The notes beneath the pieces were generated by a model. That model was not told the DNA's origin, did no database searches, and saw nothing but the letters and a program-made list of their open reading frames with translations. Below, piece by piece: positions 1,552-1,758 of a stretch of DNA of 64,000 nucleotides (positions are counted from its first letter, which is position 1; every line of letters begins with the position of its first letter). The stretch covers positions 62,001 through 126,000 of the IMG/VR virus record IMGVR_UViG_3300046703_000335; one strand, written 5' to 3'. A program made the position numbers and the translations under genes.

Positions 1552-1576
1552 GTTTCAATCCGCGCTTTTCAGCGAC
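1552..1576 (-). repeat. miniature type I-C CRISPR-repeat-like unit, copy 2
   Basis: GTCGCTGAAAAGCGCGGATTGAAAC: GTCGC start, CGCT-GAAA-AGCG hairpin and GGATTGAAAC end, as in I-C repeats (GTCGC...GCGTGGATTGAAAC). Confidence 0.75.
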
Positions 1577-1598
1577 TATATAAAAATGAGCTAATATA

Positions 1599-1717
1599 AG
1601 AATCTCTACCTAAGTCGTTCGTACTATATGATGACCAGATACCCATACTGGGCAGTGATCATCAAGTTTTTTTTACCCAAAAAAAATGTAAGTCCAAACT
1701 ATAATGGTAAAAATTCT
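1599..1717 (-). ncRNA. Y-RNA-like element B: conserved closing stem with a non-tRNA two-hairpin insert
   Basis: AGAATTTTTACC-ATTAT-AGTTTGGACT-TACATT-[T-run GGGT A-run hairpin; GATGATCA..TGCCCA-GTA-TGGGTA..TGGTCATC hairpin]-AGTACGAACGA-CTTA-GGTAGAGATTCT; ACT/AGT co-varies with GCT/AGC of A and C. Confidence 0.7.
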
Positions 1718-1733
1718 ATTAATTCGTTTGTTC

Positions 1734-1758
1734 GTTTCAATCCACGCTTTTCAGCGAC
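1734..1758 (-). repeat. miniature type I-C CRISPR-repeat-like unit, copy 1
   Basis: GTCGCTGAAAAGCGTGGATTGAAAC; 24/25 identical to 1552-1576, 157 nt between the copies. Confidence 0.78.

What the first reader, a model, noticed from the sequence alone, without database searches (positions are those of the whole stretch)
1552..1758. Two miniaturised type I-C CRISPR repeats placed exactly between the ncRNAs
GTCGCTGAAAAGCG(T/C)GGATTGAAAC keeps the ends of canonical I-C repeats (GTCGC...GCGTGGATTGAAAC) but shrinks the hairpin to CGCT-GAAA-AGCG. The copies sit at the C|B and B|A junctions in the sense orientation of the transcript. There are no cas genes in the window, and the 157-nt interval is a structured RNA, not a spacer. 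Established: Cas5d cuts at the 3' base of the I-C hairpin leaving an 11-nt 5' handle, and phage solitary repeat units can act as RNA anti-CRISPRs (Racr). Inference: the phage borrows host Cas5d to mature its RNAs and/or produces crRNA-like decoys that load Cas5/Cas7. This also predicts a host with a type I-C system.
Basis: partly seen in the sequence, partly recalled or inferred. Interest (0 to 1): 0.87.

Follow-up and report, generated by a model that had tools for sequence, protein, structure and literature searches.

The report
Shrunken CRISPR repeat mimics in phage
A large phage carries two 25-base copies of a bacterial type I-C CRISPR repeat, cut down to the parts the host's Cas5 RNase is reported to read and placed between structured RNAs; they most likely act as RNA decoys against CRISPR immunity, a known trick in a new, smaller form.

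Summary
Two copies of GTCGCTGAAAAGCG(T/C)GGATTGAAAC lie on the minus strand at 1758..1734 and 1576..1552, where chance predicts none. They keep the stem base and the 11-nt handle of genuine type I-C repeats. The usual 7-bp stem and 5-nt loop is replaced by a 4-bp stem with a GAAA tetraloop.

The copies sit in the 58-59-nt linkers of a roughly 700-nt non-coding RNA operon. The operon holds three structured modules, each closed by an 11-12-bp stem; one module contains tRNA-Ile.

- **Selection:** the repeat is 24/25 identical between the two tandem units, while the rest of the units is only 58% alike.
- **Relatives:** a related phage keeps I-C repeats in the same linkers. The closest relative lacks the whole cluster.
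- **Wider class:** short I-C repeats closed by stable tetraloops are common as solitary copies in viral contigs and almost absent from arrays.

Best reading: RNA anti-CRISPRs of the Racr type aimed at host Cas5c/Cascade. This is a new variant of a known kind. The published search criteria (at least 90% coverage of a known repeat) would not detect them.

The idea that Cas5d matures the phage's RNAs is neither shown nor excluded. The host, and whether it has an I-C system, remain unknown.

The parts
1734..1758 (-). Mini I-C repeat R1, GTCGCTGAAAAGCGTGGATTGAAAC. Hairpin 1756..1745; predicted 11-nt handle 1744..1734; predicted Cas5c cut between 1745 and 1744.
   Evidence: The cut position is inferred from Cas5c biochemistry (PMC8524198, PMC5965381).
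1552..1576 (-). Mini I-C repeat R2, GTCGCTGAAAAGCGCGGATTGAAAC. Handle variant CGGAUUGAAAC at 1562..1552; predicted cut between 1563 and 1562.
   Evidence: The GCGCGG variant also occurs in natural I-C-type repeats.
1728..1767 (-). 40-nt conserved block around R1 (UUUUGUACA-repeat-GAACAA).
   Evidence: family D1: 90% identical to the block around R2, spacing 182 nt.
1546..1585 (-). 40-nt conserved block around R2 (UUUUAUAUA-repeat-AAACAA).
   Evidence: family D1.
1776..1897 (-). Module A: a 12-bp closing stem (1897-1886 with 1787-1776) around the box TTAC-N8-CTTACAT and a tRNA-like body. The body has D, anticodon (UCU) and T arms but no acceptor stem.
   Evidence: I2 (100% complementary); z = -3.8; Rfam tRNA 51 bits, model positions 7-64 only; missed by ARAGORN.
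1599..1716 (-). Module B: an 11-bp closing stem (1716-1706 with 1610-1600), the box TTAT-N8-CTTACAT, and a body of hairpins that is not tRNA-like. This is the core of the 157-nt interval between the repeats.
   Evidence: -36.2 kcal/mol, z = -4.9.
1399..1541 (-). Module C: a 12-bp closing stem (1541-1530 with 1410-1399), the box TTAC-N8-CTTACAT, and tRNA-Ile(UAU) at 1508..1433 with an encoded CCA.
   Evidence: 62.8 bits; z = -3.8.
1365..1401 (-). Possible decayed third copy of the repeat block (UUUUAAAUAUUUUAGGAUAGCACGGAUAUGAGAAAAA), in register 183 nt after R2.
   Evidence: local alignment score reached by 25 of 2000 shuffles. Weak evidence.
1929..1958 (-). Sigma-70-like promoter candidate (TTTGCA-18-TATTAT) upstream of module A.
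   Evidence: A consensus match only.
1200..1244 (-). Intrinsic terminator hairpin (20 pairs, then a T run) that closes the ncRNA operon.
   Evidence: I1.
1245..1345 (-). Downstream RNA 'D'. With the terminator it is conserved in the nearest relative, which lacks modules A-C and the repeats.
   Evidence: conserved columns start at about window 1345.

Best explanation
The two elements are phage-borne mimics of the type I-C CRISPR repeat. They are RNA anti-CRISPRs of the Racr (solitary repeat unit) kind, reduced to a minimal form.

**Proposed mechanism (inferred)**
1. They are transcribed as part of a polycistronic non-coding RNA, from about 1925 to the terminator at 1200. In that RNA they occupy the single-stranded, AU-rich linkers between three stem-closed RNA modules.
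2. In a host with a type I-C system, Cas5c (Cas5d) recognises the G-C-rich stem base, the cleavage site and the U/C-G-G start of the 11-nt overhang. It cuts at 1745|1744 and 1563|1562.
3. The cut RNAs carry an authentic 5' handle followed by 10-17 nt of single strand and then a stable structured module. They take up Cas5c, and probably Cas8c and Cas7, in complexes that hold no guide.
4. This draws those proteins away from host crRNAs during infection.

Separation of the phage's RNA modules would be a by-product, or at most a secondary benefit.

**Shown:** sequence identity with I-C repeats, the hairpin, the position in the linkers, conservation, and the comparative pattern.
**Inferred:** transcription, cleavage, Cas binding and inhibition.
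For: 1. **The match is specific and non-random.** Two exact copies where chance predicts none. All 19 positions outside the upper stem and loop match I-C repeats from real arrays that lie beside Cas1c, Cas2, Cas4 and Cas3.
2. **What is kept is what Cas5c is reported to read.** That is the stem base, the cleavage site and U22-G23-G24 plus the 3' overhang. The loop and the 5' overhang are reported as dispensable (PMC8524198; PMC5965381).
3. **Selection.** Between the two 182-nt tandem units the repeat is 24/25 identical. The rest is 58% alike, against 52 +/- 2% for shuffles.
4. **A related phage.** IMGVR_UViG_3300032070_000613 (51% identity in a flanking protein) has the same module architecture. 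One of its linkers holds two 30-nt I-C repeats and the other a decayed copy.
5. **Accessory character.** The nearest relative (95% identity in the flanking protein) lacks the whole cluster. This is the pattern expected of anti-defence cargo.
6. **A wider class.** In the viral and metagenome sample, 83 of 135 solitary or paired I-C repeats are 28 nt or shorter, in 26 distinct sequences. Most have 4-5-bp stems closed by UUCG or GAAA tetraloops, with closing pairs that covary (AC/GU, C/G, U/A, AU/AU). Copies in arrays are 31-33 nt in 100 of 101 viral cases and in all 375 genomic cases.
7. **Gene-like context elsewhere.** Some of these short repeats look like free-standing small-RNA genes with a terminator. 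In the one locus whose neighbours were scanned, they are regulatory genes.
8. **Precedent.** A solitary I-C repeat, RacrIC1, restored plaquing about 10^4-10^5-fold on a heterologous I-C strain (PMC10651486).
Against: - No experiment bears on this locus. Expression rests on a consensus promoter match only.
- The host is unknown, so a cognate I-C system is not shown.
- I could not read the original papers on stem-length requirements. Whether Cas5c accepts a 4-bp stem is therefore unknown.
- The C variant changes U22, one of the three bases reported as most important for Bacillus halodurans Cas5c.
- No known acr gene lies nearby.
- In the type I-F precedent the inhibitory part lies upstream of the cut and depends on Cas6f. 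Type I-C has no Cas6, so the mechanism cannot simply be carried over.
- The near-identity of the two copies could partly reflect gene conversion rather than selection.
- My sample of viral repeats was capped and was defined by a pattern that fixed both ends of the repeat.
Confidence: 0.5

Rival explanations
1. Processing punctuation. The phage uses host Cas5d as an RNase to cut its polycistronic ncRNA into modules A, B and C. The repeats are there mainly for RNA maturation.
For: The repeats sit in the linkers between stem-closed modules in two phages. One cut per linker would release unit-length RNAs of 182 nt.
Against: - It would tie phage RNA maturation to a defence system that many hosts lack.
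- tRNA-Ile is a complete tRNA with CCA, which the ordinary tRNA-processing enzymes could handle.
- 0 of 122 other solitary I-C repeats lie within 500 nt of a tRNA.
- In the related phage the two intact repeats are adjacent, 84 nt apart, with no module between them, and one linker copy has decayed.
- The nearest relative does without the cluster altogether.
Confidence: 0.1
2. Guide-like regulatory RNAs (Cracr or crRNA-like). After the cut, the handle plus downstream sequence loads Cascade and directs it, by partial complementarity, to a host cas promoter or a CRISPR-guarded toxin promoter, or to a competing phage.
For: - Viral crRNA-like regulators, including nine two-spacer I-C arrays, are described in bioRxiv 10.1101/2024.10.29.618823.
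- R2 is followed by 35 nt before the CTTACAT box, which is a spacer-like length.
- In the related phage the two post-repeat tails are 77% alike, as if aimed at two variants of one target.
Against: - There is no second repeat at spacer distance: the interval is 157 nt here and 54 nt in the relative.
- From 10-17 nt after the handle, the downstream sequence belongs to a closing stem and a box shared by all modules, so it is not free to serve as a guide.
The only hits were two 9-nt and one 10-nt match in unrelated viral loci.
- The distance from repeat to terminator varies from 14 to 104 nt across the class.
Confidence: 0.13
3. I-C-derived by descent but now serving another purpose. Examples: a binding or cutting site for a phage enzyme that handles the module array, or a DNA-level signal (the handle supplies a TTGAAA -35 box).
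For: - TTGAAA-16-TAGAAT scores 10 of 12 at 1740..1713.
- The modules share conserved boxes that suggest a dedicated, still unknown partner.
Against: - Only R1 has a -10 partner.
- The positions that are conserved are exactly the I-C-specific ones.
- The same short forms occur in unrelated viral lineages that lack the modules.
Confidence: 0.12
4. A decaying remnant of a captured CRISPR array or of an older Racr, duplicated along with the 182-nt unit and now without function.
For: Decayed copies do exist: one in the relative's linker between modules 1 and 2, and possibly one at 1401..1365.
Against: The repeat is 96% identical against 58% for the rest of the duplicated unit. The hairpin is preserved with a stable GNRA loop. 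I-C repeats persist in the linkers of a phage whose flanking protein has diverged to 51% identity.
Confidence: 0.1

Closest known systems
Racr / solitary repeat units, in particular RacrIC1 (Camara-Wilpert et al., Nature 2023, PMC10651486)
   Same: A CRISPR repeat mimic carried by a phage outside any array. It lies in an intergenic accessory region, is of type I-C, and is in sense orientation within a non-coding transcript. The expected effect is competition for Cas proteins.
   Different: - The hairpin is cut from 7 bp plus a 5-nt loop to 4 bp plus a GAAA tetraloop (25 nt instead of 32-33). SRUFinder requires at least 90% identity and, for a full match, at least 90% coverage, so it would not report these.
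- There are two copies 182 nt apart, not one.
- They are embedded as linkers in a multi-module ncRNA/tRNA operon rather than forming a free-standing promoter-repeat-terminator gene.
- No acr gene was recognised nearby.
- Activity is untested.
Viral crRNA-like regulatory RNAs (Cracr) and Cracr arrays (Liu et al., bioRxiv 10.1101/2024.10.29.618823)
   Same: Phage-encoded, repeat-derived RNAs in multi-copy arrangements, including type I-C. The two handle variants (UGG and CGG) recall arrays aimed at variant systems.
   Different: A Cracr has degenerate repeats flanking a short pseudo-spacer (about 17-26 nt) that matches a host promoter. Here the interval is a 157-nt structured RNA and no target is known.
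Genuine type I-C CRISPR arrays and phage-borne mini-arrays
   Same: Identical 5' GTCGC and 3' GCG(U/C)GGAUUGAAAC, a hairpin followed by an 11-nt overhang, and a direct-repeat arrangement.
   Different: The repeat is 25 nt, not 32-33. The spacing is 157 nt of structured RNA, not a 33-37-nt spacer. No cas genes lie in the window and no leader is evident.
Engineered tRNA-guide RNA arrays (recalled from memory, not checked here)
   Same: Structured RNAs and repeat-derived elements alternate in a single transcript.
   Different: In those designs tRNA processing releases the guides. Here nothing shows that either element serves to process the other.

Membership tests
Type I-C CRISPR repeat (sequence family) | 5' GTCGC and 3' GCG(U/C)GGAUUGAAAC, i.e. 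the stem base plus the 11-nt handle | tested here: met
   I-C labels in the supplement of PMC10651486.
Type I-C CRISPR repeat (sequence family) | About 7-bp stem, 4-5-nt loop, total length 32-33 nt | tested here: not met
   4-bp stem, GAAA loop, 25 nt. Array repeats are 31-33 nt. The canonical stem and loop are given in PMC8524198.
CRISPR array or phage mini-array | Repeats separated by spacers of about 33-37 nt | tested here: not met
   The interval is 157 nt and folds into a stem-closed module (z = -4.9).
CRISPR array or phage mini-array | cas genes nearby | tested here: not met
   No Cas family among the 38 window ORFs scanned. The other 146 kb of the contig was not visible.
Racr / solitary repeat unit | Repeat-like sequence on a mobile element, intergenic, outside an array | tested here: met
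   Phage contig IMGVR_UViG_3300046703_000335. The repeats lie in a non-coding tRNA/ncRNA cluster. Two copies rather than one.
Racr / solitary repeat unit | SRUFinder's working definition: at least 90% identity and at least 90% coverage of a known repeat | tested here: not met
   An internal deletion of 7-8 nt leaves at most 14 contiguous matching bases. Criteria read.
Racr / solitary repeat unit | Host carries the cognate CRISPR-Cas subtype | not testable with these tools
   Host not identified. The exact 25-mer is absent from the genome collection. Similar full-length repeats occur in several phyla.
Racr / solitary repeat unit | Bound and processed by the Cas RNase, and inhibits interference | not testable with these tools
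   Needs biochemistry and plaque assays.
Racr / solitary repeat unit | Frequent co-location with acr genes | tested here: inconclusive
   The neighbouring small proteins have no recognised function and no relatives in the PDB. Unknown proteins could still be Acrs.
Cracr (viral crRNA-like regulator) | Two degenerate repeats flanking a short pseudo-spacer (about 17-26 nt) | tested here: not met
   157 nt between the repeats.
Cracr (viral crRNA-like regulator) | At least 9 PAM-proximal matches to a host cas or toxin promoter | tested here: inconclusive
   No TTC plus 11 nt or longer match in the 1.57 Mb held; the shorter hits were in unrelated viral loci. The true host locus is unknown.
YrlA / Y RNA-like (considered for the flanking modules, not for the repeats) | Match to RF02553 and a Ro60 (TROVE) gene nearby | tested here: not met
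   Only module 3 of the related phage matches, at 26.3 bits against a threshold of 69. No window module matches. No TROVE protein in the ORFs scanned with Pfam.

The most novel reading that the evidence does not exclude
The locus is a CRISPR-repeat-punctuated ncRNA array: a phage operon whose tRNA-like and Y-RNA-like modules are laid out like spacers between I-C repeat mimics. Host Cas5c would then dice the operon. The same cuts would mature the phage's own structured RNAs and load Cas5c/Cascade with giant non-guide 'crRNAs'. That would be a phage exploiting a host CRISPR nuclease for its own RNA biogenesis.
Probability: 0.12. Interest if true: 0.85.

Novelty: new variant of a known kind. Interest (0 to 1): 0.6.

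Why it matters
RNA anti-CRISPRs have so far been catalogued by near-full-length similarity to known repeats. This locus, and the class it belongs to, suggest that phages trim the I-C repeat down to the stem base and handle and close it with a stable tetraloop.

If that is right, three things follow:
- Published catalogues undercount RNA anti-CRISPRs.
- The natural short forms mark out a candidate minimal Cas5c recognition element, which could be useful as a compact processing tag or as an inhibitor of I-C tools.
- Repeat mimics can be built into larger phage RNA operons rather than standing alone.

The surrounding stem-closed modules with conserved boxes are an undescribed phage RNA family in their own right.

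Tried and rejected
- **Third copy upstream of module A** (1912..1885, ACCCUGAUGAAUAGGGUACUUGGUUGAAAC): not significant, 167 of 2000 shuffles score as well. Its GGUUGAAAC belongs to the closing stem of module A.
- **Hammerhead ribozyme** (suggested by CUGAUGA ... GAAAC): no stem II can be drawn, and no Rfam ribozyme hit at E up to 10.
- **CTTACAT as a general phage promoter**: 11 copies in 64 kb against 13 expected. Only the three in the cluster are ordered.
- **tRNA linkage as a general rule**: 0 of 122.
- **A 'solo crRNA' layout across the class** (handle, about 35 nt, then a terminator hairpin): the distances range from 14 to 104 nt.
- **Protospacer search** with the post-repeat sequences in all held DNA: only two 9-nt and one 10-nt match, in unrelated viral loci, and none of 11 nt or more.
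- **Host identification**: the exact 25-mer is absent from 185,579 species genomes. Full-length look-alike repeats occur in Lentisphaerae, Chloroflexi, Clostridia, Paenibacillus, Synergistales and others, which does not discriminate.
- **More phages with the module architecture**: a box-based scan found only the window's contig, the known relative and one chance hit inside a gene.
- **Known Acr or Cas proteins nearby**: none.
- **Similarity to catalogued phages**: only the tRNA-like parts match.
- **Original Cas5d substrate papers**: not held in the library.
- **Tandem Repeats Finder** sees no array, because the units have diverged apart from the repeat.

Full report
**What is there.** The window is part of IMGVR_UViG_3300046703_000335, a 210-kb phage contig of 34% G+C. 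All large ORFs lie on the minus strand. They include a DNA polymerase, a DnaB-like helicase, an NAD ligase, ParB-like and DprA-like proteins and tail-fibre proteins. No Cas family was found among the 38 ORFs scanned.

The pattern GTCGCTGAAAAGCGYGGATTGAAAC occurs exactly twice, on the minus strand: 1758..1734 (T variant) and 1576..1552 (C variant). No match appeared in 100 shuffles, even with three mismatches allowed, and no further handle-like copy stands out in the window.

**Are they I-C repeats?** All positions outside the upper stem and loop (GTCGC ... GCG(U/C)GGAUUGAAAC) match genuine I-C repeats.
- Arrays of 32-33-nt repeats such as GTCGCTCTCCGCACGGAGAGCGTGGATTGAAAC occur in Lentisphaerae, Chloroflexi, Clostridia, Paenibacillus and other genomes.
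- The Lentisphaerae array lies beside cas2, Cas1c (TIGR03640, 511 bits against a cut-off of 385), cas4 and cas3.
- The Racr paper's supplement labels this repeat family I-C.
- Canonical I-C repeats have a 7-bp stem, a 5-nt loop, a 2-nt 5' overhang and an 11-nt 3' overhang, and Cas5c cuts after nucleotide 21 (PMC8524198).

Here the stem-loop is CGCU-GAAA-AGCG: 4 bp closed by a GNRA tetraloop. It is predicted to form both alone (-4.5 and -5.1 kcal/mol) and within a 721-nt context. Rfam alone gives only insignificant CRISPR-DR9 hits.

**Context.** On the minus strand the order is as follows.
- A sigma-70-like promoter candidate at 1958..1929.
- Module A, 1897..1776.
- A linker containing R1.
- Module B, 1716..1600.
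- A linker containing R2.
- Module C, 1541..1399, which holds tRNA-Ile(UAU) with an encoded CCA at 1508..1433.
- A further RNA, 'D'.
- A strong terminator at 1244..1200.

Each module is closed by an 11-12-bp long-range stem whose sequence differs from module to module but is always complementary (I2). Just inside the stem lies a conserved box, TTAY-N8-CTTACAT, then a 6-8-nt internal loop and an inner helix. The modules fold far better than shuffles (z = -3.8 to -4.9).

Module A has a tRNA-like body (D, UCU anticodon and T arms; Rfam 51 bits over model positions 7-64) without an acceptor stem. Module B is not tRNA-like.

The repeats lie in the AU-rich linkers of 58-59 nt, 17 and 10 nt upstream of the next closing stem.

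**Evidence of selection.** R1 and R2 head two tandem units of 182 nt. In a global alignment of the units the repeat is 24/25 identical, while the remaining 176 columns are 58% identical. Shuffles give 52 +/- 2%. A 40-nt block around each repeat is 90% identical.

A possible decayed third copy lies in register, 183 nt after R2, at 1401..1365. The evidence is weak: 25 of 2000 shuffles score as well.

**Relatives.**
- The nearest relative, IMGVR_UViG_3300046710_000523, is 95% identical in the flanking 375-aa protein. It keeps RNA D and the terminator at high identity but lacks modules A-C and the repeats. The cluster is therefore accessory cargo.
- A more distant relative, IMGVR_UViG_3300032070_000613 (51% identity), has three modules of the same design, two of them with perfect 15-16-bp closing stems. 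Between its modules 2 and 3 lie two 30-nt I-C repeats (GTCGCTCTTTGATAGAGCGTGGATTGAAAC and a variant), 84 nt apart, each with a tail ending in a T run. Between its modules 1 and 2 lies a decayed copy that keeps only the 5' half.
- The sequence just upstream of the repeat (UUUUUAUAUAG) is shared between the two phages.

I-C repeats in the linkers are thus an old feature of this RNA array, and the hairpin differs in length between the two lineages. A box-based scan found the module design in no other IMG/VR contig.

**A wider class.** Scans of viral and metagenome contigs for GTCGC-N-GCGYGGATTGAAAC returned many solitary copies with shortened hairpins.
- Of 135 solitary or paired copies in the sample, 83 are 28 nt or shorter, in 26 distinct sequences.
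- Most have 4-5-bp stems closed by UUCG or GAAA-type loops. Examples: GTCGCAC-UUCG-GUGCG... in 40 loci, GTCGCC-UUCG-GGCG... in 23 contigs, GTCGCU-UUCG-AGCG..., and GTCGCC-GAAA-GGCG....
- The pair next to the loop covaries.
- Copies in arrays are 31-33 nt in 100 of 101 viral cases and in all 375 genomic cases.
- Some short forms look like free-standing small-RNA genes with a terminator. In the one locus examined, the neighbouring genes are regulatory.
- None lies near a tRNA (0 of 122).

Two caveats apply.

**Mechanism.** Cas5c is reported to recognise the base of the stem, the cleavage site and the 3' overhang, especially U22-G23-G24. It is reported not to need the loop or the 5' overhang (PMC8524198; PMC5965381). 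The short forms keep exactly these parts. A solitary I-C repeat, RacrIC1, restores plaquing about 10^4-10^5-fold on a heterologous I-C strain (PMC10651486).

I therefore favour a Racr-type decoy. Cas5c would cut at 1745|1744 and 1563|1562. It would stay on an authentic handle that leads into a structured, non-guide RNA, and so be withheld, perhaps together with Cas8c and Cas7, from host crRNAs.

All steps after the sequence comparison are inferred. The I-F mechanism, in which Cas6f and Cas7f bind the fragment upstream of the cut, cannot be carried over directly, because type I-C has no Cas6.

**Rivals.**
- *Cas5c-dependent maturation of the phage RNAs* is possible but is not favoured. tRNA-Ile is a normal tRNA. 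The relative's intact repeats have no module between them. Dependence on a defence enzyme that many hosts lack would be fragile.
- *A guide-like (Cracr) role* is weakened by three points: the 157-nt interval, the fact that the downstream sequence belongs to conserved module structure, and the absence of any PAM-flanked match of 11 nt or more in held DNA. Without the host it cannot be excluded.
- *A changed function or simple decay* is argued against by the conservation pattern.

**Known or new?** Racrs, including one for I-C, and viral crRNA-like arrays are published. The following are new here:
- the miniaturised tetraloop hairpin, which falls outside SRUFinder's criteria of at least 90% identity and coverage; the commonest short form is absent from the held supplement text, though that file was cut when stored;
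- the paired arrangement with two handle variants;
- the placement as punctuation inside a multi-module ncRNA/tRNA operon.

I rate it a new variant of a known kind.

**What remains open.** Still to be established: the host and its CRISPR type; whether a 4-bp stem is a Cas5c substrate; whether the C variant (U22 changed to C) is active; whether the cluster is transcribed as drawn; and what the stem-closed modules do.

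Noticed in passing
window 1399-1897 (minus); L123 10170-10816: An undescribed family of phage RNA modules. Each has an 11-16-bp closing stem that covaries completely between modules. Inside it are the box TTAY-N8-CTTACAT, a conserved internal loop (AUUAYA opposite GACUUM in window modules A and B), an inner helix and a variable body. There are three modules in each of two phages, and none was found in any other IMG/VR contig.
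   Followed up: partly
window 1807-1866 (minus): tRNA-like element (Rfam 51 bits, UCU anticodon loop) whose 5' acceptor strand is the CTTACAT box and which has no complementary 3' strand. ARAGORN does not call it. It is probably not a decoding tRNA.
   Followed up: partly
L123 10690-10818: Module 3 of the related phage looks like a circularly permuted tRNA: T arm, a hairpin closed by GAAA, D arm, then anticodon arm. It gives a sub-threshold YrlA (Y RNA-like) match of 26.3 bits, E = 0.004. No Ro60/TROVE gene was seen in the window ORFs scanned with Pfam.
   Followed up: partly
L123 9764-9949 (plus): Rfam HEARO RNA (the IscB-associated omega RNA) at 90.2 bits, above the threshold of 83. It lies about 200 nt upstream of the relative's ncRNA cluster, with no IscB-sized ORF beside it.
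   Followed up: no
window 23038-24243 (minus): A 401-aa protein matching PHROG 506, 'transposase' (E = 4e-111), inside the replication gene block. It may belong to an IS200/IS605-type element, which would bring its own guide-like RNA.
   Followed up: no
window 14552-18400 and 10386-11474 (minus): The 1282-aa DNA polymerase carries an endonuclease-like segment (residues 720-838). A separate homing-endonuclease-like ORF lies next to the ligase gene. Both suggest mobile insertions in replication genes.
   Followed up: no
window 1150-1345 (minus); L121 8080-8270: RNA 'D' and the terminator are highly conserved between the window and its nearest relative, while the roughly 670 nt upstream (modules A-C plus the repeats) are replaced there by about 120 nt of unrelated sequence. 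This marks a hotspot for cargo exchange.
   Followed up: yes
window 1713-1740 (minus): The handle of R1 supplies a TTGAAA box which, with TAGAAT 16 nt downstream, scores 10 of 12 as a sigma-70 promoter. R2 has no such partner.
   Followed up: no
L130-L133, L135, L138 (metagenome Ga0172381): A family in which the mini repeat GTCGCUUUCGAGCGUGGAUUGAAAC is preceded, 17 nt upstream, by an inverted handle-like sequence (AUUUCAAUCCCACC). That sequence could pair with the handle and mask it.
   Followed up: no
L003, L005 and about 40 other IMG/VR loci (for example L005 10650-10810): The commonest mini form, GTCGCAC-UUCG-GUGCGUGGAUUGAAAC, looks like a free-standing small-RNA gene: upstream hairpin, repeat, two hairpins, terminator. 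In L005 it lies next to DNA-binding and anti-repressor genes.
   Followed up: partly
L142 about 6430-6523: A viral contig with two I-C repeats separated by a 30-nt spacer. This is a conventional mini-array, in contrast to the window's arrangement.
   Followed up: no
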